Origin: Macrostomum lignano
Taxonomy: Eukaryota
DNA length: 42,067 bases
Assembly: GCA_002269645.1 (NCBI GenBank)
Contig: NIVC01002680.1
Span: forward strand, 1-42,067
Reading direction: 5' to 3'
A program made the translations under genes and the position numbers. The notes under the pieces were generated by a model that was given only the letters and a program-made list of their open reading frames with translations, was not told where the DNA came from and made no database searches. Of the stretch, positions 1 through 41,341 are shown piece after piece. Position 1 is the first letter of the stretch, and every line of letters begins with the position of its first letter.

Positions 1-993
1 ATCTCCCCACTGAGACACATCCCTCTAGAATCTTCCCACTGAGACACATCCCCTCTAGAATCTCCCCACTGCGACACATCCCCTCTAGAATCTTCCCACT
101 GAGACACATCCCCTCTAGAATCTCCCCACTGCGTCACATCCCCTCTAGAATCTTCCCACAAACACATCCCCTCTAGAATCTTCCCACTGCGACACATCCC
201 CTCTAGAATCTCCCCACTGCGACACATCCCCTCTAGAATCTCCCCACTGAGACACATCCCCTCTAGAATCTCCCCAATTAGACACATCCTCTCTAGAATC
301 TCCCCAATTAGACACAACCCCTCTAGAATCTCCCCACTGCGACACATCCTCTCTAGAATCTTCCCACTGAGACACATCCCCTCTAGAATCTCCCCACTGC
401 GACACATCCCTCTAGAATCTTCCCACTGCGACACATCCCCTCTAGAATTTCCCACTGCGACACATCCCCTCTAGAATCTTCCCACTGCGACACATCCCCT
501 CTAGAATCTCCCCAATTAGACACATCCCCTCTAGAATCTCCCCACTGTGACACATCCCCTCTAGAATCTCCCCAATTAGACACATCCTCTCTAGAATCTC
601 CCCAGTTAGACACATCCCCTCTAGAATCTCCCCACTGCGACACATCTCCTCTAGAATCTCCCCACTGCGACACATCCCCTCTAGAATCTTCCCACTGCGA
701 CACATCCCCTCTAGAATCTCCCCACTGCGACACATCCCCTCTAGAATCTCCCCACTGCGACACATCCCCTCTAGAATCTCCCCAATTAGACACATCCCCT
801 CTAGAATCTCCCCAATTAGACACATCCCCTCTAGAATCTCCCCAATTAGACACATCCCCTCTAGAATCTCCCCAATTAAACACATCCCCTCTAGAATCTC
901 CCCACTGCGACACATCCCCTCTAGAATCTCCCCACTGCGACACATCCCCTCTAGAATCTTCCCACTGCGACACATCCCCTCTAGAATATCCCC
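1..993. repeat. 30-bp minisatellite (CACATCCCCTCTAGAATCTCCCCACTGCGA)n, about 33 units, running off the window start
   Basis: Visible tandem 30-mers, each with TCTAGA. Variant units carry AATTA in place of ACTGC. It explains the repetitive minus-strand ORFs at 145-1078. Confidence 0.97.
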
Positions 994-1079
994 AAATCAG
1001 TATAATTTTAGTTAATTGGCTTCCGTGCTGATGATGCGCCTGTTTCAGCTGTGAAATATCCGATATCACAATCAACAAG

Positions 1080-2633: not shown

Positions 2634-3520
2634 TCCCCTTCATCTAGTCTCCCTGCTTCATCCAGTCTCCCTCCCTTCATCCAGTCTCCCTCTCTTCATC
2701 TAGTCTCCCTGCTTCATCCAGTATCCCTGCTTCATCCAGTCTCCCTCCCTTCATCCAGTCTCCCTCTCTTCATCTAGTCTCCCTGCTTCATCCAGTATCC
2801 CTGCTTCATCCAGTCTCCCTCCCTTCATCCAGTCTCCCTCTCTTCATCTAGTCTCCCTGCTTCATCCAGTATCCCTGCTTCATCCAGTCTCCCTGCTTCA
2901 TCCAGTCTCCCTGCTTCATCCAGTCTCCTTGCTTCATCCAGTCTCCCTCCCTTCATCCAGTCTCCCTCTCTTCATCTAGTGTCTCCTTCATCCAGTCTCC
3001 TTGCTTCATCCAGTCTCCCTGCTTCATCCAGTCTCCCTGTCTCATCCAGTCTCCCTGCTTCATCCAGTCTCCCCTCCTTCATCCAGTCTCCCTTCCTTCA
3101 TCTAGTCTACATCCCTTCATCCGGTGTCTCTCCTTCATTAAGTGTCTCCTTCATCCAGTCTCCCTCCCTTCATCCAGTCTCCCTCTCTTCATCTAGTGTC
3201 TCTCCTTCATCTAGTGTCTCTCCTTCATCCAGTCTCCCTCCCTTCATCCAGTCTCCCTCTCTTCATCTAGTGTCTCCTTCATCCAGTCTCCCTCCCTTCA
3301 TGCAGTCTCCCTCTCTTCATCTAGTGTCTTCTTCATCCAGTCTCCCTCCCTTCATCCAGTCTCCCTCTCTTCATCTAGTGTCTCTCCATCAAGTGTCTCT
3401 CCTTCATCTAGTCTCCCTCTCTTCATCTAGTGTCTCCTTCATCCAGTCTCCCTCCCTTCATGCAGTCTCCCTCTCTTCATCTAGTGTCTCCTTCATCCAG
3501 TCTCCCTCCCTTCATCCCGT
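2634..3520. repeat. 18-20 bp pyrimidine-rich minisatellite (TTCATC[C/T]AGT[C/G]TCCCT[GC/CCC/CTC]) filling CNOT9 intron 2
   Basis: Tandem units visible throughout. It explains the S/P/L-rich part of the 2979-3860 ORF. Confidence 0.95.
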
Positions 3521-3680
3521 CTCTCCCTTTACTCCTTCTCCCTTCCCCTCTCCCTACATCCGATCTTTCTTTTTTCTCTTCCTTCAACTATACCTTGTCC
3601 ATCATCCAAACCATTTTCCTCTCTGGACAAACTTGCACACAATATATTCAAATGCCAACATTTCGTCTTACCTGATGCAG

Positions 3681-3860: not shown

Positions 3861-4983
3861 AAATAGCAAAGAAAGGCGGAAATCATTGAAATACTAAACT
3901 AGTTAATAATTATATTTGCTGGGTTTCAGTAATAACATCGTAGTTATAATAATAGTGAATCTAACTAACGATTATAATTACAAGTTCTATTAATTTTAAG
4001 TTTATTGTGTTACAACTAAACAAGTTTAACAATTATTATCGATTGAAAATGTAGACTTTATTTTCCAAGAAGCTGTTTAACATCCTGTACTCGTCGGAAA
4101 TTATGATATTATAAGAATTGCCATTCTGTCTTTCGGTCAGTCGAAGTAGAATGCAAATATGCCTCTATATATATGGTGTTTATAATATTTATGCAATTGA
4201 ACAGTTATGACGACTTTTAATCAGATCACATTTGTCTGTTTCATTTATTTTCGGTTATTATATTCTTTATTTTTAAATAAATATATATAAGGCGCACTTA
4301 TCACGCTTTCTCTTGTTAAAACAGTTCTTTCTGTCTAGTTTGGTGGCTTGTATTTTTGTTTTATCTTTCCTCGTTTGCTTTGCAGAGCTGCGGTTTATTG
4401 TAGCTTAAAATGTGCAATGACAAAACTGCCATTATAAATAGTCCTGTTAGTTTGGTTTGTTTATTTTTTGGTTAGCTTTAATTTGCCTACTTATACTAAC
4501 TCGGCTACTGATGTACATTAGTAGACAGTTAAGCGCTTCTGTGCTAAAATTTGTTCGTTCGGTCGATAAATTTGTGCTTTCTTTAATTATTATTTAAATT
4601 ATCTCTCGCCTATTCAAACTCGACGATATTTTCGCATTGTTGTACTGTTAGTAGCAAGTTTGCTCAGTCAGCAAATTCTGCTGTTTTTTTAATTAATTGA
4701 ATTGTTGCGTTTATATAGCTTTGAAAGTGCGCTAACTCTCAGATTAATTCATATGCGCGTATTGGTATATTGCTCTTCTTTCACTGCGTCGATAGGATAT
4801 TTTATCTATTTTATTTGTTTGTGCATTGTGTTCCTTCCTCAAGTTTGCTTTCGTCAATTCACTTTCCATTGTTCAACGGTATGATCTGCTACAATTGAGT
4901 TACTCTGTTCTTTCAGAAATCATCTATTCAGATCGGTTGAGCAGACTTACTTTTATGTCAAAATATTACTGTTGCTTTGCTGA

Positions 4984-5015
<32 letters not shown>

Positions 5016-5021
5016 CTGTCC

Positions 5022-5063
<42 letters not shown>

Positions 5064-5066
5064 CTA

Positions 5067-5161
<95 letters not shown>

Positions 5162-5206
5162 GTCTGTCTGTCTGTCTATCTGTCTGTCTGTCTATCTGTC
5201 TGTCTT

Positions 5207-5245
<39 letters not shown>

Positions 5246-5294
5246 GTCTGTCTGTCTATCTGTCTGTCTTTCTGTCTGTCTGTCTGTCTATCTT

Positions 5295-5327
<33 letters not shown>

Positions 5328-5344
5328 GTCTATCTGTCTGTCTT

Positions 5345-5377
<33 letters not shown>

Positions 5378-5436
5378 GTCTGTGTATCTGTCTGTCTATC
5401 TGTCTGTATTTCTGTCTGTCTGTCTGTCTGTCTGTC
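4984..5436. repeat. (TCTG)n tetranucleotide microsatellite, with a second short tract at 5583-5657
   Basis: Direct reading. It explains the LSVC and RQTD ORFs. Confidence 0.97.
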
Positions 5437-8913: not shown

Positions 8914-9396
<483 letters not shown>

Positions 9397-10836: not shown

Positions 10837-11253
<417 letters not shown>

Positions 11254-20292: not shown

Positions 20293-21654
20293 CCAAGCAT
20301 GCACTGAATACAGGTGTAATACTAATTAGATAGTAAGGCATTTAGCCTTAGTAAGATAGTCATAGTTACTCTTGCTATTTACCCAAAACTGCACTATGCT
20401 GCATTATCTGCCTTGACTCTAGCCATAATGTAACTCTAGAAAATAAATTCCAAAACTATGACTAATAGTTGGATGCCTTTTGTCCACTTATTTCAATAAA
20501 GTATCTTTAGAATACATTAAATTATTAATATCATATAACCAATAAAATCTTAGTAATAATTACAATAATATAAATTAATATATAATAAAATAATTCTATT
20601 GAATTAAAGTTTGAGGTAAGCATTGATTTTATTCACATATAGTGCAACCTTGGGTCCTTAGGAATCCCTTGGCCATTTTTATTGGCAATGCACATATACA
20701 TGTAAGTCATTAGTCACTATTGACTACAAGCAGTCATATGGCTATTATTCTGTCTCATAGTTTGGATTATCTTATATCTAAAGCTGAGTGGATCGATCGA
20801 TTGACCGGCCGGGTTTAATGCGTATCTCCTCCTAGACGGCTGGCAACTCAAATGCGAGACTTATATATGTCAATGCAGAATTTTCCTACGCAACAAATAG
20901 GCTATTTTAATGTTGAAATTTCCAAAATTAAGTCAGTTAAAAAAGCAAAAAACTGTTTTCTTAACCTTCTTTGGCCACTTTGCCTCTCCAGTGGAGGGGT
21001 AGTGGCATAATTGTAAAAACAACCACCCCAACCTCCTCCCGCGGGTCGCTGTGTTTTGGAGGGGTGGGTGACGCGTGTTCTGGGTTCAATGCTAATAAAA
21101 CCCCCGCGTGTTGGGGGTGAAGTAAAATTTAATGATTCCCCCGGCCCAGAATAGGGGGGTTGGTTTGGGCTGAGTGTACATAGAAATGTACTGTGTAAAC
21201 AGATAGATAAGGACTGTGTCGAGATTCAATTGGTTTTATTATCGGCGTCTTTCAAAAGACTGTGTATTTAGCTGGGCAGCTAAATTCAATGAATAAACTT
21301 GCCAGCCTCTTACTAGCAGGCAGTGAATGTACAGTCGATACTTCGATGCTTTAAATCGGGAAGTTCAAACGCTAACTGTTCCTTGAGTTTTAAGCTTTGA
21401 GAGGAGAGAATTTATATTGCTGGAAAGATCTTGCAACGCTGAGTTTGGGGATATAAGTTATTTGCTTTAAATATGAAAACAAAAAGCACAGCATTGAAAA
21501 AACGATTTCCATACTTTTAAACTTTCTGCCAAGATTGTACTTGGAGGGGGGTTGCGTACAGAAATTCAAGCTAGCTGTCATTTGAGTAATTTCAGTAATG
21601 GAGGAGGCGGGTGACAAATTTCAATTGGTTTGATTATTGGTGCTTTCAGTCCGT

Positions 21655-23060
21655 CAGATAAGAGAGTAGAGAGAAGAGAGATTTCAAGAAGAGAGGATAG
21701 AAAGATGATAGAAAAGACAGTAGATATGAGAGCTAAGAGATTAAAGACGAGTCGACAACAGAGGGGAGAGAAGAGGGGAGTGAGGCAGAAATGATGAAGA
21801 GGGAAAGTGAAGAGAAGAGAATGTAGAGGGAAGAAAGGAGGGGAGAGGAAAAATGAGAGAGCAAAGGAGGGAGGAGAGAGGAGGGATAAGAGAGTACAGA
21901 TGAGATAGAAGAGAGAGGAGAGATGAGACAGGAGATGGTAGAGAGGAGAGGGGAAAGATGAGAGAATAGAGATGAGAAAATAGAGAGCGCAGAGAGGAGA
22001 GATGAGAGATGGGAAATGATTGATAAGAAAGTAAGAGTAGAGATGAGAGAGGAGATGAGAGCAGAGAGAAGAGATTAGATAAAGGAGCAAAGAGGAGAGA
22101 GGAGACAGGAGAGAGTCTCAGTCTGGACCATGTCAGTCAATTTTTGCAAACAGGGAAAACATGCTATGATATTTCAGAGGTTTTATGGAGGATTTTGAAG
22201 ATTTTTTGACGTATACCCAAACAAGTAAAAAGCATATTTTTATAGACTTCAGTTTCATAGTCTTAAGTGACTGAAATTTGATAGAGCTAATATTTTTTAA
22301 ATTGATGGATTGTAGCTTGAAGGAGATGATACACGCTGGATTGCAGTTTAACGGAGAGGATTTTGATGATATCTGTTTCATAGAGAGGATGAAATGGCTA
22401 AATGAAAGGGAATAGAGAAAAGAGAAAAGGAAAGAGTGGATAAAATATTAGATAAAAGAGAAAATGAAAAGAGAGAATTAAAAGGGACAGATTAAAGAAA
22501 AGAAAAAGAGAATAAAGACAAGAGAAGAGATGAGGGAATTGAGAGGAGAGAGGAGAGGGGGTAAGAGAGGAGGAAGAGGAGACAGGAGGGAGTAGAGCCG
22601 AAAGACGAGAGAGAAGAGATAAATGAGTAGAGATGAGGGGAGGGAGAGGAGAGAGAAGCGAGAGGATAAGGGAGAGAGGAGAGGGGAGAAAGTAGAGAGA
22701 TGAGAGAGCAGAGAGGAGATAAAGGAGAGGAGAGAGAAGAGATAAAAGAGGAGAGAGGAAAAAGTAGTGATGAGAAAGAAGAGAGTATAGATATGAGAGC
22801 GCAGAAAGGAGAGATAAGAGAGTAGAGATGAGAGATGAGAGATGAGATGAGAAATGATAGATAAATGAGAAGATGAGAGCAGAGAGGAGAGAGGAGAGAT
22901 TAGAGATAAGAGAGCAAAGAGGAGAGAGGGACAGACAAGAGTCTCAGTCTGGACAATGGCAGGCAGTCAATTTTTGCAAACAGGTAAAACAATATGGTTT
23001 TTGGGAGGTTAATAGAGGATTTGGAAAGGATTTGGATAATGGGATTCGTGTCATTGGATT
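21655..23060. repeat. GA-rich low-complexity tracts with a duplicated unique tail (offset about 826 bp)
   Basis: AGAGTCTCAGTCTGGAC...CAGTCAATTTTTGCAAACAGG at about 22112 and 22938, each preceded by a purine tract. Confidence 0.8.
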
Positions 23061-26709: not shown

Positions 26710-26771
26710 GTAAGGAACTGTGGTTATGGGGAAGATGTCAGGTTCTGGCACAGCCTAGCATATTAGAACTG

Positions 26772-27581
26772 TGTCAGTATGGCATAGGCTGCAGTGTCAG
26801 TATGGCATAGGCTGCAGTGTCAGTATTGCATAGGCTGCAGTGTCAGTATTGCATAGGCTGCAGTGTCAGTATGGCATAGGCTGCAGTGTCAGTATGGCAT
26901 AGGCTGCAGTGTCAGTATTGCATAGGCTGCAGTGTCAGTATGGCATAGGCTGCAGTGTCAGTATGGCATAGGCTGCAGTGTCAGTATGGCATAGGCTGCA
27001 GTGTCAGTATGGCATAGGCTGCAGTGTCAGTATGGCATAGGCTGCAGTGTCAGTATGGCATAGGCTAGGCTGCAGTGTCAGTATGGCATAGGCTAGGCTG
27101 CAGTGTCAGTATGCATAGGCTGCAGTGTCAGTATGGCATAGGCTAGGCTGCAGTGTCAGTATGCATAGGCTGCAGTGTCAGTATGGCATAGGCTAGGCTG
27201 CAGTGTCAGTATGCATAGGCTGCAGTGTCAGTATGGCATAGGCTAGGCTGCAGTGTCAGTATGGCATAGGCTAGGCTGCAGTGTCAGTATGGCATAGGCT
27301 AGGCTGCAGTGTCAGTATGCATAGGCTGCAGTGTCAGTATGGCATAGGCTAGGCTGCAGTGTCAGTATGCATAGGCTGCAGTGTCAGTATGGCATAGGCT
27401 GCAGTGTCAGTATGGCATAGGCTGCAGTGTCAGTATGGCATAGGCTGCAGTGTCAGTATGGCATAGGCTGCAGTGTCAGTATGGCATAGGCTGCAGTGTC
27501 AGTATGCATAGGCTGCAGTGTCAGTATGGCATAGGCTGCAGTGTCAGTATGGCATAGGCTGCAGTGTCAGTATGGCATAGG
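26772..27581. repeat. 23-bp minisatellite (TGTCAGTATGGCATAGGCTGCAG)n with 22- and 28-bp variants in the last UBL7 intron
   Basis: Direct reading of tandem units. Confidence 0.97.
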
Positions 27582-31727: not shown

Positions 31728-32903
31728 TCAGGCATGGTTAAACAGGTATTTGATGACGAGCCGCATGCCAGGATCGATGTAGATCTCTCGCAGACGTCTA
31801 GCCAGGGTGTTGTGCTCGCAGCTCCGCTCAGCAGGTGCTGGATAATGATGCAGCCGGTCTTTCGCTAGGCTGCTCACTCTGTAGACAGCGAAGGCTTGGT
31901 AGCAGGACTCCACTTTGACTGGAATGCTGTTCCGGTTTATAGCAATTTCATCCGTGATGATGCTGCGATCGTATTCAGTAACGCTGCAGAACCGCTTCTT
32001 GCTGAAATAGGTGCGAGAGCAGGGATCGTAGAGTCCGTTTCGAAAGCGGCTGTTGGCGCAGAGTACGTCCAGTTTGGGCTTGGCACTGAAGTAGTAAATT
32101 CCCTGAGCAATGTTGTCCAAGCTCCATGGATCCCACTCCAGATCTGGATCAACTGAAATCATCAGATCAACTTTATCTGCCAAATTGTCGTAAATGTAGT
32201 TCAGGTACATATTTCTGAGGACACTCATTGTGATGCCGCGATCAACGAGTTCCTCTTCCGTACGCTGCTGTCCCCAGCCGGGTCTGTGCACCTTCCCGGA
32301 CCTGTATGTGATGTTAATTTTGCACGGGGCTCTTGAGTTTATTGGCGTGCATCCGAGAATCACCGCCTGATTGTGTTTCCGACGCACGTCGTGAAGAAAC
32401 TCTCGGGTGCCATCGTTCGAGTCATTCTCAACGAAAATCATCCAGTAGTCTTTGAAGAGCTTGCCCAATCTGTGCAACTCCACGACGTTTTTCTGCAAGC
32501 GCTCCTTGGCGTTTCGCACTGACGCGACAAATACGGCAGTTTTGGTGCGCATCCAGTCTCTCCCAATACGCGTTCGATAGTTTTGGTCAAGCTCGCGATT
32601 CTCTCGTCGCATAAGAGGCATACGTTCGCGTGTATGGACGAAGTACATGGAGCTGTTCTGCAAGTGCAAGACTTCAGCGTGTCCGTAGCTAAAATCGGAA
32701 GATTTTTTCTCAATAAGTTCAGGATCGAGTTGTGTCACAGCGCTTCTGCTGGTTCTGCCTGGACGGTTGATAGAAAGTATAGCGTTGGGAATTTTTCTTA
32801 TCTGATGAAAGTAGTCCGTTGTGAGGTGTACATGTAGCATGGATAAACAAAACAGGACATTGCATGAAACAAGAATGCCGGCGAAAAATTTCATGCCGAT
32901 CAT
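31728..32903 (-). CDS. Type II membrane GT-A glycosyltransferase-like protein (GT2/CAP59-GT69-like), intronless, copy 1, 391 aa
   Basis: N-terminal hydrophobic anchor. Motifs VFVASVRN, FKDYWMIFVENDSNDGT, LRNMYLNYI, a DxD (VDPD), YD, V.SCY.AFAVYR and SCEH are those I recall for CAP59-like/GT2-like transferases. The family label was not verified by search. Confidence 0.75.
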   Translation of the reverse strand: MIGMKFFAGILVSCNVLFCLSMLHVHLTTDYFHQIRKIPNAILSINRPGRTSRSAVTQLDPELIEKKSSDFSYGHAEVLHLQNSSMYFVHTRERMPLMRRENRELDQNYRTRIGRDWMRTKTAVFVASVRNAKERLQKNVVELHRLGKLFKDYWMIFVENDSNDGTREFLHDVRRKHNQAVILGCTPINSRAPCKINITYRSGKVHRPGWGQQRTEEELVDRGITMSVLRNMYLNYIYDNLADKVDLMISVDPDLEWDPWSLDNIAQGIYYFSAKPKLDVLCANSRFRNGLYDPCSRTYFSKKRFCSVTEYDRSIITDEIAINRNSIPVKVESCYQAFAVYRVSSLAKDRLHHYPAPAERSCEHNTLARRLREIYIDPGMRLVIKYLFNHA

Positions 32904-33904
32904 TTTGCTATCATGGAATGTACGTGAGCCTTTTTTGACTAGTAACTAGCGCGGGTAATGCATTTTTCTTTTAGGATTGGCTGTTGAATAACTCGTTTAA
33001 GAATTGGAATGATAAAAACAAATTAAAACTATATACAATATATTTTTAATTGAATTAATAACTTGGCCAAAAAAATACATTTACACAACTTTCTTCTGTA
33101 AAAACTATTTTGTTAAGCTTTTCTCGACTTTTATAACAGAATATTTTTTTTAAAAATGACACGAATTTTGAAATGTACGATTTTCTTATAACACGTGTCT
33201 CTTTGATTTCTACTGTAATTGTCATTGTCTGTCATATATATATATATATATGCTTACGCAGCTAAAATTGCTTGTTAGAAATTTTTAGGAACTTTAAATT
33301 GGGACATCGGGCTGAAAATTATTACTGATTTCTACAGAAGTACGCGCGTACCTTTAATCATTAGGGACCCAAAAGATAACAAAATTAAATTTCTATCTGG
33401 AGTTTTTTCTGAATTGATCAAATAATTCTAAAATTTATTATTAATTTATGAGTTGTTTTCTATATTTGTTTGTGTTTGTGTTTCTTGTATTGGCTAGTTA
33501 ATTTACTTTTATGGGTTAACTGAAGAAATGAAGTACAGGAGTTGTTTGTATTAGTATTGCACAGTTCTTGTGTTTAGGGCCGGTCTAGCCTGTCTCGGGG
33601 TTCATTTTAAATAAATTGAATTTAAAGTAAGATACATTGACTCAGAACTTGACCTTCTTGTCCAAAATCCTTACATTCGATGCCCGATCCGGAGAAATCC
33701 GACAAATGTATGTCATGCTTGTACACTTTATTAGAAGGCCCATATCTTAATTTGAAACAGTTAATGGACATCTTAATTCTTAACCTGATATTACCACGAT
33801 CACAAAATCTAAAATTTTGGCCCGAGGCGGCTTCCTAAATTAAGAAAAGTTGCCGTTTTTATTGCATGGTACATTACTTCCATAGCCTACATTGCATGTA
33901 GTAT

Positions 33905-34110
33905 GGGGTTGTAGCCTGGTGGTTAGGGCATCGGACTCGCGACTGAAAGGTCTGGGTTTCGATTCTCGAACCACTCGGAACAATTTGTGTCCTTGAACAG
34001 GACATTTGACTCTGCATTGCTTCAGTTCACTCAGCTGTAAAATTGGGTGCCAGCAATAGCTGGGGTAATTGAGGATGTGTGTGGCGACCCTAATGCAGTC
34101 CTTGGACTGA
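33905..34110 (+). mobile_element. tRNA-derived SINE with CORE-like central domain
   Basis: A box TAGCCTGGTGG (33912) and B box GGTTTCGATTC (33955), then GTCCTTGAACAGGACATTTGAC...TTGCTTCAGTTCACTCAGCTGTAAAATTGGG, resembling the MIR/CORE consensus. The 3' end is uncertain. Confidence 0.75.
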
Positions 34111-34429
34111 ACAGCCGTACGCAGTCTTCAAATGCGCCGCGCAATAGCGACAGAATTAGACACCGAATGAACAGACACGTGCTGATCATACTTACATTCA
34201 CATGCAGTCTACAGATATGATATTACCACGAGGGCAAAGGGTAAGGGTGCCAAAGGGAGAGCCTTTTATGTCATAGACACATAATTAGACAGGTACATAC
34301 TATTTTATAGGAGCAGAAAGAAAGGATTCAATTTTCAAAATGGAAGAAGTGGATATCAACTTTGAAATAGACTAATTTCAACTTCGACTGGCTGGACAAC
34401 TTTGAATTACTTGACTTAGCTGTAATTGG

Positions 34430-37400
34430 TACTGGTCTGTAGACACAGCGGTAGCCCCTGAAAGCCCGTAGACAGGTAGATGCGTGGGGCCGGTCAGGGT
34501 GGTCCGCCGGTCCGTCCTGCAGCGTGATCTTTGTAGGAAATAAGGGGGCTTGTCTAGTCGCCCAAAGGAACTATTGTAGATGAGCCGTGGAATGCTGTCG
34601 GGCTGGGAGACCTCGTCAATGGACGGGTCGGCCCGAGGTAGCGTAGCCGGTCTCTCGTAAAGAAAGGGCAGTGAGTGACAAACAAAGTGCTGAGTATCTT
34701 TATTGTCGTACGTGCAAAAAGGGCAAAGTTCACTCTCTCGAGATCACCTCGGAGAAAGCAGTGCCTAGCGAGGTAGCCATGGCCGGTAAAGGTCATGACA
34801 AGGGCTGGAGATGATGGTGGTGCAGCTTCGCTCCGGCTTCTGCCCGCTTCTCCGCGATTTTCAGTCGAGGATCAACCCAGGCGTCGTGGCGGTTTGTCCC
34901 GACTGTGGCTTTGAGCCCCAAACGGTGGCATACCTCTTCAACTGCCCTGCCTATCTGACGCAGCTTTGTCCGGGTGATCTATGGACTAACCCGTCCAGAA
35001 CCGATACGTGCAACTTTCTGGAATCGGCCGCTCTCGGACCAAGGGAACAGGGCCAAGGAAAGAGCCAAAGCCGCCCCTCCTGGCGAGTGTGTCTGCCAAC
35101 TCGTTCCCCGGAAACCCTGCGCGCCCTGGGATCCACTTCAACCTGATAGTATTGCTACTGGCCAGGAGGTTGAGCTGCCGGGCGCAGTCAGCGACTGTCC
35201 GGGAGTTTGTGGTGGTGTGGCAAAGGGCCTGTAAGGCCGCTTGGCTATCAGAGTGGATAACGATAGTCTCTCCTCTCGTACCCTTGGCATTCAGTTCTGC
35301 AGCGCAAGATCGAGCTAATAGCAAGGGCTTCGTTCTGGAAGACTGTGGAGGGTCTGCCAGTGTGCTGGGCATGCGTGGCAATGACGCGGCTGTAATGATG
35401 ATGCAGACCCCAAAGCCGGCGCGACCGTCTTTGATGGATCGGTGCGTGTAGCAGTGGACCTCATCCTTTGAGGGGATGATGACCTTGTAGCGCTGAAAAG
35501 ATGTTGAGAGTGCAGGGTTCAACGTCAGATAAGACGTGGAGCCCGCCGCTGTCTCTCAAGTTTTTGAGGTATAAGAGGTCGGCGTGAGGCAGGAGCTTGC
35601 GCGTAGCCATGGCCCTATGGGGCAGGAAACGAATGCCAGCGTCAATTACACGGCGGGCAGTCTTAGCAGCTTCCCTGCGGACAAAGATGTCCAGCGGGGG
35701 ATGTTGAGGCCATCGTAAGGAGAGCAGACGGGGGCGCTCACGATCATGCGGCATGGGCCCCCTTGCGCTCTCCTGAGAGTCTCCAGACAGGTCTTCATCC
35801 GCAGGGCGCTAGCCCAGACCATGCCGCGGTGCGAGATAGCAGGCCTAACCATTGCAGTGTAGATCCACCAGAGGTGCTTGGGGGTGCGCCCCAAAGTGGT
35901 GACGACGACCCTACGCAGTTGCGCGAGGACTGCGAGGGCCTTCTTGGCTTTTGCTTGAGCGTGGGGCGACCAGTTCAGCCTGTGGTCCAGGGTAAATACC
36001 CAGACATTTAGTCTGCTTGCAGAAGGGGATTTCCCTTCCGTAAAGCGTGAGCGGCTGAATTTGCCACTTGGTCCTGCTGGTTAACATGATCGCTGCCGTC
36101 TTAGTCTCAGAGAGCTTTAGACCACAAAGATTCGCCCATTGCTCAGCGGCGTAGAAAAATTCTGAAGAATTGAAGGTCCCTGATGTTATCTGGGGACGGA
36201 CCAGACGCCACCGCGGTGACATTCTGACTACTTTGAGAATGGGGTCAGGCCGAGCATCCCGAAGGAGCTCATCGATGACCATATTCCAGAGCACTGGAGA
36301 CAGCACCCCATCTTGCGGGCTACCTTTGCAGACCGAGACCGTCCTCTGGTGGCCCAGCAGACTGGCGGTGGCCGTGCGATGGCTGATCATGTACATGATC
36401 CATCTGGTGAGATTTGTGTGCGTTTGCCTCTTACAAAGAGCTCTTCCGAACGCCTCGAAGAGGACGTTATCGAAGGCGCCAATGATTTACAAGAGGGTCT
36501 CCTGAGCGAAGCCGTTTCCAAGCACGGCCTACTCAAGTTTATCGACCAGGGCGTGCAGCGCGCTTTCATTGCGTGCGACCCGCCTGAAAAGCGTGCTGGT
36601 TTTCGCTGAGAGGCTTGTTCTTCAGCTTCACAGAGAGGAGGCGCCAGAGCACCAGTCTTTCCATCAGCTTGACCAGGGAGAAGGTCAGACTGATTGGTCT
36701 GAAGGATTTGATAGAATGGTAGTCCGGGCGGCCTGGCTTCGGAATAAAGATCACCTTTGCCTCGGTCCAAGCCTGTGGGACATGGCCAAGCGTTATGCAT
36801 GCCCGAAAAAGGCTTACGCAGTTTACGCAGGAAGCCTGGGCATTTAACCGCCTCTTTTAGGAGGGCAGGTACAATGCCGTCGGGTCCTGGGGCTTTGAAA
36901 GCTTTGAAGTAGTTTGCCGCGGTACTCTGTGATGATAGAGTCAGCCAGCGCGTGACCTCCTTCAGAGTGGCCCGGAGTGGTCAGGTTGGCCGGCTCGTTG
37001 GGGGAAAAACGCAGAGAGCATTACATCAAGCGTTTCCCCTGGGTTATCCATGGACGTGCCGTCGGTGCGTTTGACCGAGGAGAGCTTAGACATTTTGTCC
37101 AGCGTTGCTTTTGAATTGCTTTAACAATTCTGGAGGTGGAGTGTAAGCCTCTAGCTCCTCGCAGTATTGACGCCATTTCTGAGCTTTCGCGTTCCTGACC
37201 TGCCTTTTAAACTCATGGATTGCTTCATGATAGGCGGTTTGGTCCGCTGGGCTCTTGGCTTCAGTTGCTCTGCAATGGAGTCTCTTAGCACTGCGACGGA
37301 GGTTGCCGAGCTCGGGATTCCACCACTGCGCAGATTTTTTCCCTTTATAGGCTTTTAAAGGACAGGATGCCTCAAAGGCGGCGGTTAGCGTTTCTGTCAA

Positions 37401-38660
37401 CAAAGTCGCGCACTCATCCGCTCCTTGGCAAGTCGACGTGATCGTGGATGGTTGGCCGGAAAACCGATAAACTCCTTCAGGGCGAGCCCGAAGGTTTCCC
37501 AATCAGTGTTTCTGATGTCCAGTCTCCATGTAACACGATTTTGCTGCGCGCGGCCATCAGGTTGAAGGAGATGAACTTGTGATCGGAGAGTGAGAGGCTG
37601 GAAGCACCCGCCAGGCAATGCTTTTGTAGAGCCCGGGTGTTGCGAGTGTGGTATCGATCACCTCCTATCAGCGCCCGTTGTCAAATGTAGGGGTGGACCC
37701 AGAGTTGCAGAACTCAAGGGTCGTAGAGGCAACGTAGGCTAGGAGTCTTCGCCTCTCTGATTAATGCCCTTGCTGCCCCAGTGAGTATGGTGGGCGTTGA
37801 ATGTCGCCGGCAACCATGAGCTCGCAGTTTTTGGCAGAGCAAAGCTCGACCAGCGTAGCGAGGGTTCTAACGACGACCGCAGCATCACCTGGTAGGTAAA
37901 GCGAGGCAATGAGAGTGGTTTTTCCAGGAAGGAGATCTTCAGATTGGATGACGCAGATGTCCCTGTTAGACAGGTCCGATCTGTGTCACGCGCTGAGCGT
38001 TTTGCCGGGAAAAATGCAGTCTCTGGGAGGCTGATTGGCACTGCCGGGGTAAGTATAGAAACAGTTGTAGCCGGAAGGGGCGTTCTGAGGCTAACCTCTG
38101 AGGGTCCAAGGTTCCTGGACGAGGATGAGCCCCGGTATGTGGAGCTCGGCCTAACGCATAAGGTTGACCGAGGCTGCGACGCAGTGCTGCAAGTTGATCG
38201 GCATCGGATTCCCAGGCTGCTGATCATTATCACGCAGTTGGGGAATCGTGGAGCAGGTCATCCTCCTCAGAGGTCATCCTACTCATCCTCGGAGGTGGTT
38301 GGCCCGCAGACCTCCATGGGAGTTTCAGCGTCCTCGGCAGTTAAGGTGGCTGTGGAGTCCTCCGCGGACGTGAGCCCAGCGTGGACGTTTCCGTCGCCTC
38401 CCCTGTATGCTTCGGCGCCGTCACTACCCATACCCTCCGCCTCGTTGGTCAGGTCGATGCGGGTGACGCCAACTTCCTAGTGAGTGACAGCCTCTAACCA
38501 GTCAGTCAGCGCCTCCACGCTTTTAACCTGGTCTTCTGGCTGTTGGGTTGGAGCACGAGAAGTGCAGACCCGCTCAAGATGCGCCCGGAGGTTCCTGGCC
38601 TGGTCCAGCGCGCGCTGAACCAGACCGGACCTCCGGGGGCTCCTGGTAGGTCTGCAGTTG
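34430..38660 (-). mobile_element. Decayed non-LTR retrotransposon, LOA/Lian-like (APE-RT-RNase H-CCHC)
   Basis: Domains in order on the - strand: INLQHC...LVQEPW and FNAHHTHWGS (APE); IFIPKPGRPDY..KSFRPISL, GSPQ.GVLSPVLWN and WIYTAMVRP (RT); IHSDSQAAL.AL and WIPG.AG..GNELAD.LAR (RNase H); FTGHG..CPFC...QHFVC.CP (zinc finger). Many stops and frameshifts. Both ends are approximate. Confidence 0.9.
34811..34995 (+). mobile_element. Inverted fragment of a different APE-type LINE (C-terminal zinc-finger region) inside the LOA-like element
   Basis: QLRSGFCPLLRDFQSRINP...CPDCG..PQTVAYLFNCPAYLTQLCPGDLWTNP fits the QLRSG.C...CP.C...HLF.CP...L...DLW..P LINE C-terminal signature, on the opposite strand to the host element. 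Confidence 0.75.
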
Positions 38661-39588
38661 CTCACTTTCTCAGCTTCTCAGCTTCAGAGGCCTCTAACCA
38701 ATTGGTTCGATTTCGCCAATGGCCACAATAATTTTTGGTTACTCCACCAAAGCTGCCATGCGATTCACTCTTCATGCATGTACGAACGTATGTGGGCCAA
38801 CCTCCGGGGCATACAAAGTGTGTACATGCACAGCCAGACGATAAGAGAGTCAGGCCGGGCCGGACGCTATGCACCCTGTCTAAGCGTGTGGTATGTTGTA
38901 CGTGTCCGTGTGCGGGGTGACACTTCTCAGGTGTCAGTTTTTGGCGGCGGTGCCCAAAGCGCCTATGTGAACGATATAAACTAGCCATCCTGGTGTGAGT
39001 TTTCGCACATAATAATTCCAACCTACAGCTCATCTCCATTGAAGGCTACTTCAGGTGCCAATGGCGCGCCTTTGCAGATTTTGGTAGACATTTTCCCGCC
39101 AATCTACTAAACGTAGCACTCTACGAAAAGTAGTATCGAAAAGTGCGTCAATGACGAAAACTGTTAATGAGAGTAGCGGGTTTTTATATTCACCCCATGG
39201 AGAAAGAAAGGAATGGATGATGGAGTGCTAATCTGACTGAGATATTTTTGTTTTGCTCTTTTTCGACTTTTGGCACCTAGCTGGTACCCCCGACACACTT
39301 ATCAAATTGTTTTGGCTTAATCCGCTTACATATACATGTATGCATTGTGCGTAGGCACAAAATCCGCCTAAGTAGATAAAGCTGTCTCCATTGAATTACT
39401 GATCCTGTTTGTCACACGTACGCAAGTCTGCACATAAACAAAAACTATAATTTGCTACAAAGTACAAATCATCTACGCAAGTTAAACCCTGTTTTGCCAC
39501 CTGTTGCCATAACTTATCGCGTATTTTTGTGAAATTTTGTTATTGCCAACAGTGAAAATATTTTTGCTTAATGTTTTTGTGTTGCCCT

Positions 39589-39742
39589 CCAGGGGCGCCA
39601 GCACCAAGGGGCTTTTAGCACCTGGGGCTTTAGCACCAGGGGCGCCAGCACCAGAGGCGCCAGCACCAGAGGCGCCAGCACCAGAGGCGCCAGCACCAGG
39701 GGCGCCAGCACCAGGGACTTTAGCACCAGGGGCGTTAGCAGG
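39589..39742. repeat. 15-bp GC-rich minisatellite (GCACCAG[A/G]GGCGCCA)n
   Basis: About 10 tandem units in an AT-rich context. Confidence 0.9.
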
Positions 39743-40174
39743 AGCCTATCAGTAGCACGTGCATATCAATCTAGATCTCATTTCACAAGCTCATGCAATA
39801 CTTCGCAGAGTCAACACTAATATAAGCTTATCCGGCATATGATCAGTCTGGACAAAATATGCTTATGAGTGAGCAACAGCTGTTCTCTTCTATAGCATCT
39901 GTTTTCTTTATGGATATGCAGCACAAAGGATCGATGCAAAATACTTACAAAACAAGGTCGCCCGATCGAGCGAGTTTAACCTTATTTTTGCAACCTGTTT
40001 ACCATCCATGCATGCAGGTGCTCACATGCAATACACTGTAGGTATCATATTTTTTTGTATTTTTAGTCTTTCGCAAGAAAATTACTTTTTTGTCGTTTAC
40101 TACTTTTATTACTCCCTTCACCTCCAGTTTTAGTAGCATAAATTAGACTCAATCTGTAGCTATTAATGAACCAT

Positions 40175-41341
40175 TCAGGTATGATCGAACATCGCTTTGA
40201 TGACGAGCCGCATGCCAGGATCGATGTAGATCTCTCGCAGACGTCTAGCCAGGGTGTTGTGCTCGCAGCTCCGCTCAGCAGGTGCTGGATAATGATGCAG
40301 CCGGTCTTTCGCTAGGCTGCTCACTCTGTAGACAGCGAAGGCTTGGTAGCAGGACTCCACTTTGACTGGAATGCTGTTCCGGTTTATAGCAATTTCATCC
40401 GTGATGATGCTGCGATCGTCTTCGGTAACGCTGCAGAACCGCTTCTTGCTGAAATACGTTCGAGCACAGGGATCGTAGAGTACATTTGAAAAGCGGCTGT
40501 TGGCGCAAAGTACGTCCAGTTTGGGCTTGGCGCTGAAGTAGTAAATTCCCTGAGCAATGTTGTCCAAGCTCCATGGATCCCACTCCAGATCTGGATCAAC
40601 TGAAATCATCAGATCAACTTTATCTGCCAAACTGTCGTAAATGTAGTTCAGGTACATATTTCTGAGGACACTCATTGTGATGCCGCGATCAACGAGTTCT
40701 TCTTCCGTACGCTGCTGTCCCCAGCCGGGTCTGTGCACCTTCCCGGACCTGTATGTGATGTTAATTTTGCACGGGGCTCTTGAGTTTATTGGCGTGCATC
40801 CGAGAATCACCGTCTGATTGTGTTTCCGACGCACGTCGTGAAGAAACTCTCGGGTGCCATCGTTCGAGTCATTCTCAACGAAAATCATCCAGTAGTCTTT
40901 GAAGAGCTTGCCCAATCTTTGCAACTCCACGACGTTTTTCTGCAAGCGCTCCTTGGCGTTTCGCACTGACGCGACAAATACGGCAGTTTTGGTGCGCATC
41001 CAGTCTCTCCCAATACGCGTTCGATAGTTTTGGTCAAGCTCGCGATTCTCTCGTCGCATAAGAGGCATACGTTCGCGTGTATGGACGAAGTACATGGAGC
41101 TGTTCTGCAAGTCCAAGACTTCAGCGTGTCCGTAGCTAAAATCGGAAGATTTTTTCTCAATAAGTTCAGGATCGAGTTGTGTCACACGGTGTTTGCTTCG
41201 CTCTAGCTGATTGATAAAAATAATACCATTTGTAAATTTTCCGAATTGATAGAAGTAGTCCGTTGTGAGATGTATCATGGATATACAAAACAAAACATTG
41301 AATGAAACAAGAAGGCAGGCAAAAAGTTTCTTGTCAAACAT
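40175..41341 (-). CDS. Type II membrane GT-A glycosyltransferase-like protein, intronless, copy 2, 388 aa
   Basis: Paralog of 31728-32903 in the same orientation (offset 8447). The likely start is MFDKK (ATG at 41341), which aligns with the copy 1 anchor. The catalytic domain is nearly identical. Confidence 0.75.
   Translation of the reverse strand: MFDKKLFACLLVSFNVLFCISMIHLTTDYFYQFGKFTNGIIFINQLERSKHRVTQLDPELIEKKSSDFSYGHAEVLDLQNSSMYFVHTRERMPLMRRENRELDQNYRTRIGRDWMRTKTAVFVASVRNAKERLQKNVVELQRLGKLFKDYWMIFVENDSNDGTREFLHDVRRKHNQTVILGCTPINSRAPCKINITYRSGKVHRPGWGQQRTEEELVDRGITMSVLRNMYLNYIYDSLADKVDLMISVDPDLEWDPWSLDNIAQGIYYFSAKPKLDVLCANSRFSNVLYDPCARTYFSKKRFCSVTEDDRSIITDEIAINRNSIPVKVESCYQAFAVYRVSSLAKDRLHHYPAPAERSCEHNTLARRLREIYIDPGMRLVIKAMFDHT

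What the first reader, a model, noticed from the sequence alone, without database searches (positions are those of the whole stretch)
31728..41341. Tandem intronless glycosyltransferase-like genes of a family atypical for animals (horizontal-transfer candidate)
Both ORFs are intronless, whereas the native CNOT9 and UBL7 genes here have repeat-filled introns. The motif set (FKDY..IFVENDS.DGT, ILGC..N...C, RN.YL.YI, DxD, V.SC...FAVYR, CEH, IYIDP.M) matches, from memory, CAP59/GT69-like and GT2-like transferases known mainly from fungi, algae, bacteria, giant viruses and bdelloid rotifers rather than standard metazoan Golgi GT families. Each copy has a type II signal anchor and stem, suggesting adaptation to the secretory pathway. 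It could produce an unusual glycan (mucus, adhesive or egg-shell; speculation).
Basis: partly seen in the sequence, partly recalled or inferred. Interest (0 to 1): 0.8.

Follow-up and report, generated by a model that had tools for sequence, protein, structure and literature searches.

The report
Giant-virus-like glycosyltransferase gene pair in flatworm
Two intact, intron-free neighbouring genes in a Macrostomum-type flatworm genome encode membrane-anchored sugar-transferring enzymes whose only named animal relatives are in Macrostomum lignano and whose next-closest relatives are giant-virus proteins, so they are a credible but unproven case of an old gene transfer into an animal.

Summary
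Two same-strand, single-exon ORFs (31728-32903, 391 aa; 40175-41341, 388 aa) are 90% identical. They lie beside intron-bearing CNOT9 and a UBA/CUE-domain gene, and a SINE and a decayed LINE separate them. The AlphaFold model (pLDDT 83.7) is a type II-anchored GT-A glycosyltransferase with VENDSxDGT, DPD and CEH motifs. The window proteins score below threshold on Pfam CAP59_mtransfer (GT69), but 40 of 44 aligned family members hit that family.

The only named-organism homologues I found are about ten paralogues in Macrostomum lignano, all single-exon where checked. After a large gap come hundreds of metagenomic proteins. All five genomic contexts I examined look like giant viruses, and homologues occur in isolated Marseilleviridae. 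Bacterial and phage relatives are more distant and mostly lack the membrane anchor.

The flatworm clade is monophyletic (100/100 bootstraps) on a long branch, and its deeper position is unresolved. Codon composition matches the native exons. Long-term dN is far below a saturated dS. The catalytic region of the two copies shows gene conversion.

Verdict: these are functional, long-resident, lineage-restricted glycosyltransferases. Ancient horizontal acquisition from a giant-virus-type source is the best explanation (about 0.6) but is not proven. The membrane anchor is shared with the viral homologues, so it is not a post-transfer adaptation.

The parts
31728..32903 (-). GT copy A: single-exon CDS of 391 aa plus stop. 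It encodes a type II membrane GT-A glycosyltransferase of a CAP59/GT69-related family.
   Evidence: ORF; Pfam PF11735 E=0.0048, residues 136-356; AF2 model pLDDT 83.7, pTM 0.79; GT-A matches in PDB and BFVD.
40175..41341 (-). GT copy B: single-exon CDS of 388 aa plus stop, paralogue of copy A.
   Evidence: ORF; 90% aa identity to copy A; DNA similarity confined to the CDS; AATAAA about 68 nt after the stop.
32829..32891 (-). Signal-anchor (transmembrane) segment of copy A, about residues 5-25, after a 4-5 residue cytoplasmic tail.
   Evidence: Hydropathy maximum at residues 6-7; AF2 helix 2-44 followed by a low-confidence stem 39-65; an anchor is present in all 14 flatworm proteins.
32550..32723 (-). 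Flatworm-specific stem module of copy A (residues about 61-118: a helix, two short strand pairs, then helices). Viral and bacterial homologues lack it.
   Evidence: Profile matches of non-flatworm proteins start at about query position 105-130. The VENDS motif sits at residue 150-191 in flatworm proteins versus a median of 100 in viral-type proteins. The module is conserved among flatworm paralogues. Blockwise pLDDT about 50-95 over residues 61-118.
32406..32432 (-). VENDSNDGT (residues 158-166) after beta-strand 2. This is the position of the nucleotide-sugar-binding acidic motif, the equivalent of GT2 'DDGSxD'.
   Evidence: E159, N160, S162 and D164 are invariant in 44 sequences; strand 152-159 in the model; read directly from the sequence. 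The role is inferred by analogy with GT-A enzymes.
32142..32150 (-). DPD (residues 252-254): a DXD metal-binding motif at the end of beta-strand 4.
   Evidence: D254 invariant and D252 at least 90% conserved; strand 247-251 immediately precedes it; sequence read.
31812..31820 (-). CEH (residues 362-364): a conserved C-terminal Cys-Glu-His. The His is a candidate third metal ligand.
   Evidence: At least 90% conserved in 44 sequences. The analogy is with the predicted H318 plus DXD metal site of the fungal mannosyltransferase Cgm1, which is not a GT69 enzyme, so this is only a generic GT-A analogy (PMC12493134). Inferred only.
31728..32732 (-). Tract of copy A (codons about 58-391) homogenised with copy B (40175-41170), probably by gene conversion.
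   Evidence: dS is 0.05 in this tract versus 0.52 in the first 57 codons, and the flanks cannot be aligned.

Best explanation
The two ORFs are functional paralogous genes for type II membrane-anchored GT-A glycosyltransferases. Each protein has a short cytoplasmic tail, one transmembrane anchor, a flexible stem, a flatworm-specific stem module and a lumenal catalytic domain. By analogy with GT-A enzymes, VENDSxDGT would bind the nucleotide-sugar, DPD (DXD) with the CEH histidine would hold Mn2+, and six conserved cysteines would form lumenal disulfides. The enzyme would then transfer a sugar to a glycan, protein or lipid acceptor in the ER or Golgi. The donor could be GDP-mannose, by analogy with GT69 Cmt1, but that is a guess. 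The family is a divergent branch of the CAP59/GT69-related family (PF11735). Among named organisms I found it only in Macrostomum, where it has expanded to at least four deep subfamilies. Its nearest relatives are membrane-anchored glycosyltransferases of giant viruses (Nucleocytoviricota, including Marseilleviridae). The most likely history is one ancient horizontal acquisition by the macrostomid lineage from a giant virus or a similar donor. Full compositional amelioration, gain of a stem module, repeated duplication and local gene conversion would have followed. Shown here: the intact ORFs, the motifs, the predicted fold, the taxonomic pattern of the homologues that I could label, purifying selection, and physical linkage to native genes. 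Inferred: enzyme activity, donor sugar, cellular location, and the direction and source of the transfer.
For: Fold and motifs: the AF2 model has pLDDT 83.7. Foldseek gives probability 1.0 to the GT-A enzymes COLGALT1, PcManGT, CvHAS, RmlT, TarP and SpsA.

Family: 40/44 aligned homologues hit PF11735, best E=2.4e-13.

Distribution: the profile search of 1.84 billion representatives gave 948 hits. The flatworm-type hits score 1e-59 or better and the next hits 4e-32 or worse. All 30 clusters I looked up are either M. lignano or unnamed metagenome proteins.

Viral identity of the nearest relatives: the best BFVD match is a Marseillevirus LCMAC102 glycosyltransferase (E=8.7e-24, 26% identity, TM 0.78), followed by Sylvanvirus and ChoanoV1. 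IMG/VR returned 43 loci, including giant-virus MAGs. Three of these records have exactly the published lengths of Tokyovirus, Melbournevirus and Lausannevirus. Five of five neighbourhoods examined are giant-virus-like, with PolB, split RPB2, RING, FtsJ, ankyrin, ELO and other glycosyltransferases. Most of the top representatives (for example, all of those ranked above P0058) are closest to large viral contigs.

Shared architecture: the N-terminal anchor is present in 14/14 flatworm and 15/15 large-viral-contig proteins. It is absent from the phage-like hits and from 12/14 GTDB hits.

Residency: the genes lie on one contig with CNOT9, histone H3 and retroelements. GC3 is 0.57-0.59, against 0.59-0.61 for the CNOT9 exons. 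M. lignano paralogues sit on contigs up to 832 kb and are single-exon.

Function: against the M. lignano homologues pN is 0.15-0.22 while pS is 0.79-0.84 (saturated). Between the two copies dN/dS is 0.34-0.44.

Monophyly: the flatworm clade is recovered in 100/100 bootstraps.
Against: The phylogeny does not place the flatworm clade inside a viral clade. Beyond a metagenomic sister of unknown origin (P0008, 83/100), support is about 0, and the midpoint root falls on the flatworm stem.

Only neighbour-joining with a Kimura correction was available; no ML or mixture models.

The large libraries carry no taxonomy. I could label only 30 of 150 top clusters and none of the other roughly 800 hits, so absence from other animals or protists is not demonstrated.

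Fungi, which are also opisthokonts, have GT69, so descent with loss is possible.

The window proteins themselves fall below the Pfam threshold (17 versus 28.8 bits).

No expression data, no enzymology and no solved GT69 structure exist.
Confidence: 0.6

Rival explanations
1. Vertical descent: the genes are relics of an ancient eukaryotic or opisthokont CAP59/GT69-like gene. Most animals lost it, macrostomid flatworms kept and expanded it, and giant viruses captured similar genes from their hosts.
For: Fungi carry GT69 (PMC8092235 and PMC12493134) and a green alga has the domain. Composition is fully host-like. The family has deep paralogues in M. lignano at 38-62% identity. The tree does not nest the flatworm clade within viruses.
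Against: The flatworm proteins are much closer to the viral-type proteins (profile E about 1e-32, 25-30% identity) than to the fungal-based Pfam model (E=0.0048). No other named animal or eukaryote appeared among the 30 clusters looked up. The scenario needs many independent losses across Metazoa.
Confidence: 0.25
2. Horizontal transfer, but from a bacterium or phage rather than a giant virus or a eukaryote-type donor.
For: True bacterial members exist, for example on a 2.36 Mb Spirochaetia chromosome and in Bacteroidota and Verrucomicrobiota MAGs. Many small high-GC IMG/VR contigs look phage-like.
Against: These hits are more distant: they first appear around rank 58 in the profile search and have lower tblastn scores. 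Almost all lack the N-terminal membrane anchor shared by the flatworm and giant-virus proteins. Some 'bacterial' MAG contigs carry proteins identical (L055 = L034, a giant-virus MAG) or nearly identical (L053 ~ L031) to those on IMG/VR viral contigs.
Confidence: 0.1
3. Artefact: contaminant DNA, a chimeric assembly, or a recently integrated giant-virus fragment rather than host genes.
For: There is no read-level evidence for the joins. The window is a complete 42,067-bp contig.
Against: The genes sit between native intron-bearing genes and animal retroelements on one contig. A tRNA-derived SINE 1 kb upstream is shared with M. lignano loci. GC3 equals that of the native exons, while the surrounding non-coding DNA is 28-38% GC. 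Paralogues lie on several large M. lignano contigs. No other viral-type gene is nearby.
Confidence: 0.03
4. The ORFs are decaying or non-functional duplicates.
For: Between the copies dN/dS is only moderately low (0.34-0.44) and rests on few substitutions. Frameshifted relatives occur in two Logan assemblies.
Against: Both ORFs are intact. All catalytic-motif residues are retained. Long-term pN of 0.15 against saturated pS shows strong constraint.
Confidence: 0.03

Closest known systems
Macrostomum lignano uncharacterised proteins (BOX15_Mlig026086g1, Mlig011967g2, Mlig008975g1, Mlig030790g1, Mlig003076g1-3, Mlig029645g1, Mlig033934g1; UniRef labels some of them 'Glyco_trans_2-like domain-containing')
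   Same: Same clade (100/100 bootstraps). They share 38-62% identity with the window protein, the same anchor, stem module and catalytic architecture, and the same six conserved cysteines. Those checked are single-exon genes.
   Different: None is closer than 62% and synonymous sites are saturated. They are therefore orthologues from another species or old paralogues. None has been characterised and no paper mentions them.
Membrane-anchored glycosyltransferases of giant viruses (Marseillevirus LCMAC102 A0A481YUL9; homologues in Tokyovirus, Melbournevirus and Lausannevirus; giant-virus MAGs; the metagenomic P0009/P0011 group)
   Same: They have an N-terminal anchor plus the same GT-A catalytic domain with VENDSxDxT, LGC, RxxxMxxLRNxYL, DxD, SCFxxFxxYR and CEH. 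They are the best structural and profile matches.
   Different: Identity is only 23-30%. The viral proteins are about 60 residues shorter and lack the flatworm stem module. They sit in compact viral genomes. Their function is also unknown.
CAZy GT69 / Pfam PF11735 CAP59_mtransfer (Cryptococcus Cmt1, Cap59, Cap6; Aspergillus ClpA; Neurospora GT69-2)
   Same: This is the nearest curated family. They are Golgi-resident GT-A type enzymes. The alignment covers profile positions 18-222 of 242. The family enzymes are alpha-1,3-mannosyltransferases using GDP-Man.
   Different: The window proteins score 17 bits against a 28.8-bit threshold. They are linked to the family only transitively through the viral-type members. 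The sugar and linkage are unknown.
GT2/GT25 GT-A enzymes with solved structures (COLGALT1 9evj, SpsA 1h7l, TarP 6h1j, PcManGT 6yv7)
   Same: Same Rossmann-like GT-A fold, with the DXD after beta-4.
   Different: Identity is 9-15% and TM-score 0.35-0.47. There are no significant sequence hits. GT2 and GT25 are inverting families, whereas GT69 is retaining (from my own knowledge), so the mechanism cannot be transferred from them.

Membership tests
GT-A fold nucleotide-sugar glycosyltransferases | Rossmann-like alpha/beta/alpha catalytic domain | tested here: met
   AF2 model with pLDDT 83.7. Foldseek gives 228 PDB matches at E<=1e-3; the 50 best listed are essentially all GT-A enzymes.
GT-A fold nucleotide-sugar glycosyltransferases | DXD metal-binding motif after beta-4 and an acidic nucleotide-binding motif after beta-2 | tested here: met
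   D252-P-D254 follows strand 247-251, and E159-N-D-S-N-D164 follows strand 152-159. These residues are invariant or nearly invariant in 44 sequences.
GT-A fold nucleotide-sugar glycosyltransferases | Demonstrated sugar-transfer activity | not testable with these tools
   Needs a recombinant enzyme assay.
Pfam PF11735 CAP59_mtransfer / CAZy GT69 | Score at or above the Pfam gathering threshold (28.8 bits) | tested here: not met
   Copy A scores 17 bits (E=0.0048) and copy B has no hit. However, 40/44 aligned homologues hit at E<=0.01, best 2.4e-13.
Pfam PF11735 CAP59_mtransfer / CAZy GT69 | Membrane-anchored or secretory-pathway (Golgi) protein | tested here: inconclusive
   An N-terminal anchor is predicted. 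Localisation was not tested. GT69-2 is Golgi-localised in Neurospora.
Pfam PF11735 CAP59_mtransfer / CAZy GT69 | Retaining alpha-1,3-mannosyltransferase using GDP-Man | not testable with these tools
   Known only by analogy from the literature.
Pfam PF00535 Glycos_transf_2 (GT2) | Significant match to the GT2 profile | tested here: not met
   The window proteins have no hit at E<=10. 31/44 relatives have weak hits, best 8.7e-07.
Horizontally acquired gene in an animal | Physically integrated among native host genes | tested here: met
   Same contig as CNOT9, histone H3, a UBA/CUE gene, a SINE and a LINE. Read-level confirmation was not possible.
Horizontally acquired gene in an animal | Absent from other animals, with the closest relatives outside animals | tested here: inconclusive
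   No other named animal occurs among the 30 clusters looked up, and the nearest non-flatworm relatives are giant-virus-like. The libraries are unlabelled, so the check is not exhaustive.
Horizontally acquired gene in an animal | Nested within a donor clade with statistical support | tested here: not met
   In the NJ bootstrap analysis the flatworm clade has 100% support and its sister P0008 (unknown source) 83%. Deeper nodes have about 0%, and the midpoint root falls on the flatworm stem.

The most novel reading that the evidence does not exclude
An ancestor of macrostomid flatworms captured a membrane-anchored glycosyltransferase from a giant virus (Nucleocytoviricota). The gene was domesticated, gained a lineage-specific stem module and expanded into at least four subfamilies that now build a flatworm-specific glycan. 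This would be one of very few documented functional giant-virus-to-animal gene transfers.
Probability: 0.35. Interest if true: 0.65.

Novelty: new member of a known kind. Interest (0 to 1): 0.45.

Why it matters
Functional gene flow from giant viruses, or from their protist-associated gene pool, into animals is rarely documented. Here the candidate is an intact, selected and expanded enzyme family sitting next to ordinary host genes in a laboratory model genus (Macrostomum) with RNAi and transgenesis (from my own knowledge), so the hypothesis can be tested directly. If confirmed, it would point to a lineage-specific glycan, for example in mucus, adhesive, eggshell or reproductive secretions. 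It would also give a first experimental handle on a glycosyltransferase family that is very common in giant viruses but has no characterised viral member that I know of and no solved structure. If instead the family proves to be vertically inherited, it shows extreme loss of an opisthokont GT69-like gene across animals.

Tried and rejected
- Word-indexed protein search with the 44-sequence profile returned only 4 proteins.
- A search with the UBA/CUE exon, meant to identify the species, returned nothing. I therefore cannot say whether the window is M. lignano itself or a relative. Shared repeats are only 78-85% identical to the three M. lignano loci held.
- Searches for longer contigs carrying the sister sequence P0008 found nothing in IMG/VR or in JGI metagenomes.
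- The flatworm-clade profile found only one metagenome locus, which duplicates L006.
- PDB sequence searches found no relative, with either the single sequence or the profile. NCBIfam gave no hit.
- Rfam and ARAGORN found nothing in the window.
- Literature searches found nothing on Macrostomum HGT, the M. lignano gene identifiers, or giant virus plus flatworm plus glycosyltransferase. A PF11735 search found only fungal, algal and Borg mentions.
- I rejected the idea that the anchor reflects adaptation after transfer, because the viral homologues share it.
- I rejected a recent viral insertion: composition is ameliorated and there are no neighbouring viral genes.
- I did not compute an alien index, because the large libraries carry no taxonomy.
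- Midpoint and outgroup rooting could not polarise the tree.

Full report
**1. What is there**

On the minus strand there are two intact ORFs, 31728-32903 (391 aa) and 40175-41341 (388 aa from the ATG). The proteins are 90% identical.

DNA similarity (93.9% over 1,183 nt) begins 4 nt before the ATG and ends 3 nt after the stop. The flanks cannot be aligned. Both start codons sit in a CAAAATG context, and copy B has AATAAA about 68 nt after its stop.

Divergence is very uneven along the genes. The first 57 codons have dS 0.52, while the remainder has dS 0.05. The duplication is therefore old, and the catalytic part has been homogenised since, most simply by gene conversion.

Three elements lie between the copies:
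- a tRNA-derived SINE (33906-34148);
- a decayed non-LTR retroelement, with an RT fragment at 35911-36396 and RNase H at 34986-35522;
- AT-rich spacer.

The rest of the contig carries:
- CNOT9/Rcd1 in at least two exons (Pfam E=2.8e-19 and 3.8e-78);
- two histone H3 genes;
- a UBA/CUE-like terminal exon.

Minisatellite arrays fill the introns. Only the name 'UBL7' remains unverified.

**2. What the proteins are**

Copy A gives a weak, sub-threshold hit to Pfam CAP59_mtransfer (PF11735; E=0.0048, 17 bits against a 28.8-bit cut-off) that covers nearly the whole profile. Copy B gives none. NCBIfam and PDB sequence searches are empty.

An AlphaFold2 model built on a 44-sequence alignment is confident (pLDDT 83.7, pTM 0.79). 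It shows:
- an N-terminal helix (residues 2-44, hydrophobic core about 5-25);
- a disordered stem (39-65);
- a small structured module (61-118);
- a GT-A domain.

Foldseek matches only GT-A glycosyltransferases in the PDB, at low identity: COLGALT1 E=3.8e-8, PcManGT, chlorovirus hyaluronan synthase, RmlT, TarP and SpsA.

The canonical functional positions are occupied and conserved:
- VENDSNDGT follows beta-2;
- D252-P-D254 follows beta-4;
- C362-E-H364 lies near the C-terminus.

Six cysteines are invariant across the flatworm clade and its nearest relative, which fits a lumenal, disulfide-bonded domain.

The mechanism I infer is a Mn2+-dependent transfer of a sugar from a nucleotide-sugar in the ER or Golgi lumen. 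GDP-mannose is suggested only by analogy with GT69 Cmt1, Cap59 and ClpA.

**3. Relatives**

The word-indexed search found only M. lignano proteins, at 62% and 58% identity.

A full HMMER scan of 1.84 billion cluster representatives, using a four-sequence profile, gave 948 hits. After the window's own protein (P0001), the next four (E 1e-89 to 1e-59) are three M. lignano clusters and a Logan fragment. There is then a gap to E=4e-32, followed by a long series of 300-340 aa proteins.

Cluster look-ups show about ten M. lignano gene models in at least four deep subfamilies, on contigs up to 832 kb. All other clusters looked up (24) are unnamed metagenome proteins. The M. lignano genes examined are single-exon.

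Of 44 aligned homologues, 40 hit PF11735 (best 2.4e-13) and 31 hit Glycos_transf_2. The flatworm proteins are thus a divergent branch of a CAP59-like family.

**4. Who owns the nearest non-flatworm relatives**

- BFVD: the best match by far is a Marseillevirus LCMAC102 glycosyltransferase (E=8.7e-24, 26% identity, target TM 0.78). Sylvanvirus and the choanoflagellate virus ChoanoV1 follow.
- IMG/VR: 43 loci, including giant-virus MAGs and isolate genomes. The lengths 372,707, 369,360 and 346,754 bp are exactly those published for Tokyovirus, Melbournevirus and Lausannevirus (PMC5158117).
- Neighbourhoods: all five examined are compact and giant-virus-like. They contain family-B DNA polymerase, thymidine kinase, ankyrins, an RPB2 split by an HNH insert, an SNF2 helicase, RING proteins, an FtsJ methyltransferase, Fapy glycosylase, ELO and further glycosyltransferases.
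- Nearly all of the best 57 representatives are most similar to proteins of these large viral contigs.
- GTDB genomes gave 14 weaker loci. Some are real bacterial genes, for example on a 2.36 Mb Spirochaetia chromosome. At least two encode proteins identical or nearly identical to those on IMG/VR viral contigs.
- The N-terminal anchor is found in 14/14 flatworm proteins, 15/15 proteins from large viral contigs and 116/141 representatives. It is absent from the small phage-like contigs and from 12/14 GTDB hits.

The anchor is therefore a shared feature of the flatworm and giant-virus branches, not a flatworm adaptation. What is flatworm-specific is an extra stem module of about 60 residues.

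**5. Phylogeny**

I built a neighbour-joining tree from 212 sequences and 284 trimmed columns, with Kimura distances and 100 bootstraps.
- The window, M. lignano and Logan sequences form a clade in 100/100 replicates.
- A single 312-aa protein from a 1.3 kb ENA metagenome contig (P0008, no anchor, unknown organism) is sister in 83/100.
- Everything deeper is unsupported.
- The midpoint root falls on the flatworm stem, because that branch is long.

The tree thus shows one origin for the flatworm family and no close donor. It cannot polarise the transfer. No ML software was available.

**6. Residency and selection**

GC3 of the two genes (0.57-0.59) matches the adjacent CNOT9 exons (0.59-0.61), while the surrounding non-coding DNA is 28-38% GC.

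Against the nearest M. lignano genes, synonymous sites are saturated (pS 0.79-0.84) while pN is 0.15-0.22. That indicates strong long-term purifying selection.

A SINE 1 kb upstream of copy A is 84-85% identical to copies near the M. lignano genes.

These data argue against contamination, a recent viral insertion or pseudogenes. They cannot replace read-level confirmation of the assembly.

**7. Interpretation**

The best explanation (about 0.6) is an ancient horizontal acquisition of a giant-virus-type anchored glycosyltransferase by the macrostomid lineage, followed by amelioration, gain of a stem module, expansion and local gene conversion.

The main rival (about 0.25) is vertical descent from an ancient GT69-like eukaryotic gene with massive loss. 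It is disfavoured because the flatworm proteins resemble the viral branch far more than the fungal-based Pfam model, and because no other animal homologue surfaced. It is not excluded, since the big libraries are unlabelled and the tree is unresolved.

A bacterial or phage donor (about 0.1) is disfavoured by distance and by the missing anchor. Artefact and pseudogene readings are each about 0.03.

**8. Comparison with what is known, and novelty**

Functionally the genes look like ordinary Golgi-type GT-A enzymes. The family, CAP59/GT69-like, is known.

The M. lignano members are already in public databases as uncharacterised or 'GT2-like' proteins. I found no paper that discusses them, or any giant-virus link to flatworms.

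I classify the finding as a new member of a known kind. It has moderate interest (0.45), because a functional giant-virus-to-animal transfer would be unusual and is directly testable in Macrostomum. The evidence so far is distributional rather than phylogenetic.

Noticed in passing
window 33906-34148: A tRNA-derived SINE head with A/B-box-like sequence (GGGGTTGTAGCCTGGTGGTTAGGGC...GGGTTTCGATTCTCG). It is 84-85% identical to copies lying 2-6.5 kb upstream of the GT homologues in M. lignano loci L001-L003. ARAGORN and Rfam do not call it.
   Followed up: partly
window ~34200-38500 (- strand): A decayed non-LTR retrotransposon lies between the two GT genes. It has an RT fragment at 35911-36396 and an RNase H at 34986-35522, with many overlapping broken ORFs and 53-59% GC.
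   Followed up: partly
window 8986-9396 (+) and 10837-11247 (-): Two histone H3 genes lie 1.4 kb apart. The minus-strand copy has a canonical H3.3-like tail. The plus-strand copy carries a cluster of tail substitutions (T11M, G13A, Q19R, S28T, A29P, P30L, S31V, I124M), so it may be a tail-variant H3.
   Followed up: no
window 1-994, 2637-3523, 4980-5436, 26771-27581: Large minisatellite and microsatellite arrays: a 30-nt unit x33, an 18-19-nt unit x49 inside CNOT9, (CTGT)x115, and a 23-nt unit x34 before the UBA/CUE exon. They create long spurious ORFs.
   Followed up: partly
window 21000-23000: Strongly skewed composition (GC skew +0.43 to +0.70, AT skew up to +0.42), which suggests a purine-rich low-complexity block. 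Not examined.
   Followed up: no
L048 (1-968) and L049 (539-1020), Logan SRR31628434 / SRR31628403: Short contigs from two related sequencing runs carry flatworm-clade homologues, including the flatworm-specific stem module. Both are interrupted by frameshifts, and in L049 the DXD region is lost. These could be pseudogenes in another species or assembly errors. L048 also ends in a 21-nt minisatellite like those in the window.
   Followed up: partly
L055 vs L034; L053 vs L031: Contigs filed in GTDB as bacterial MAGs ('bacterium WB9_2_064', 'uncultured Aquaspirillum') encode proteins identical or nearly identical to those on IMG/VR viral contigs, one of which is a giant-virus MAG. This suggests viral contigs were mis-binned into bacterial MAGs.
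   Followed up: partly
M. lignano contig of 563,949 bp (P0157/P0159; PAA81979, PAA81968): Two paralogues of another subfamily lie on the same M. lignano contig, with accession numbers 11 apart. Local duplication of this family therefore also occurs there.
   Followed up: no
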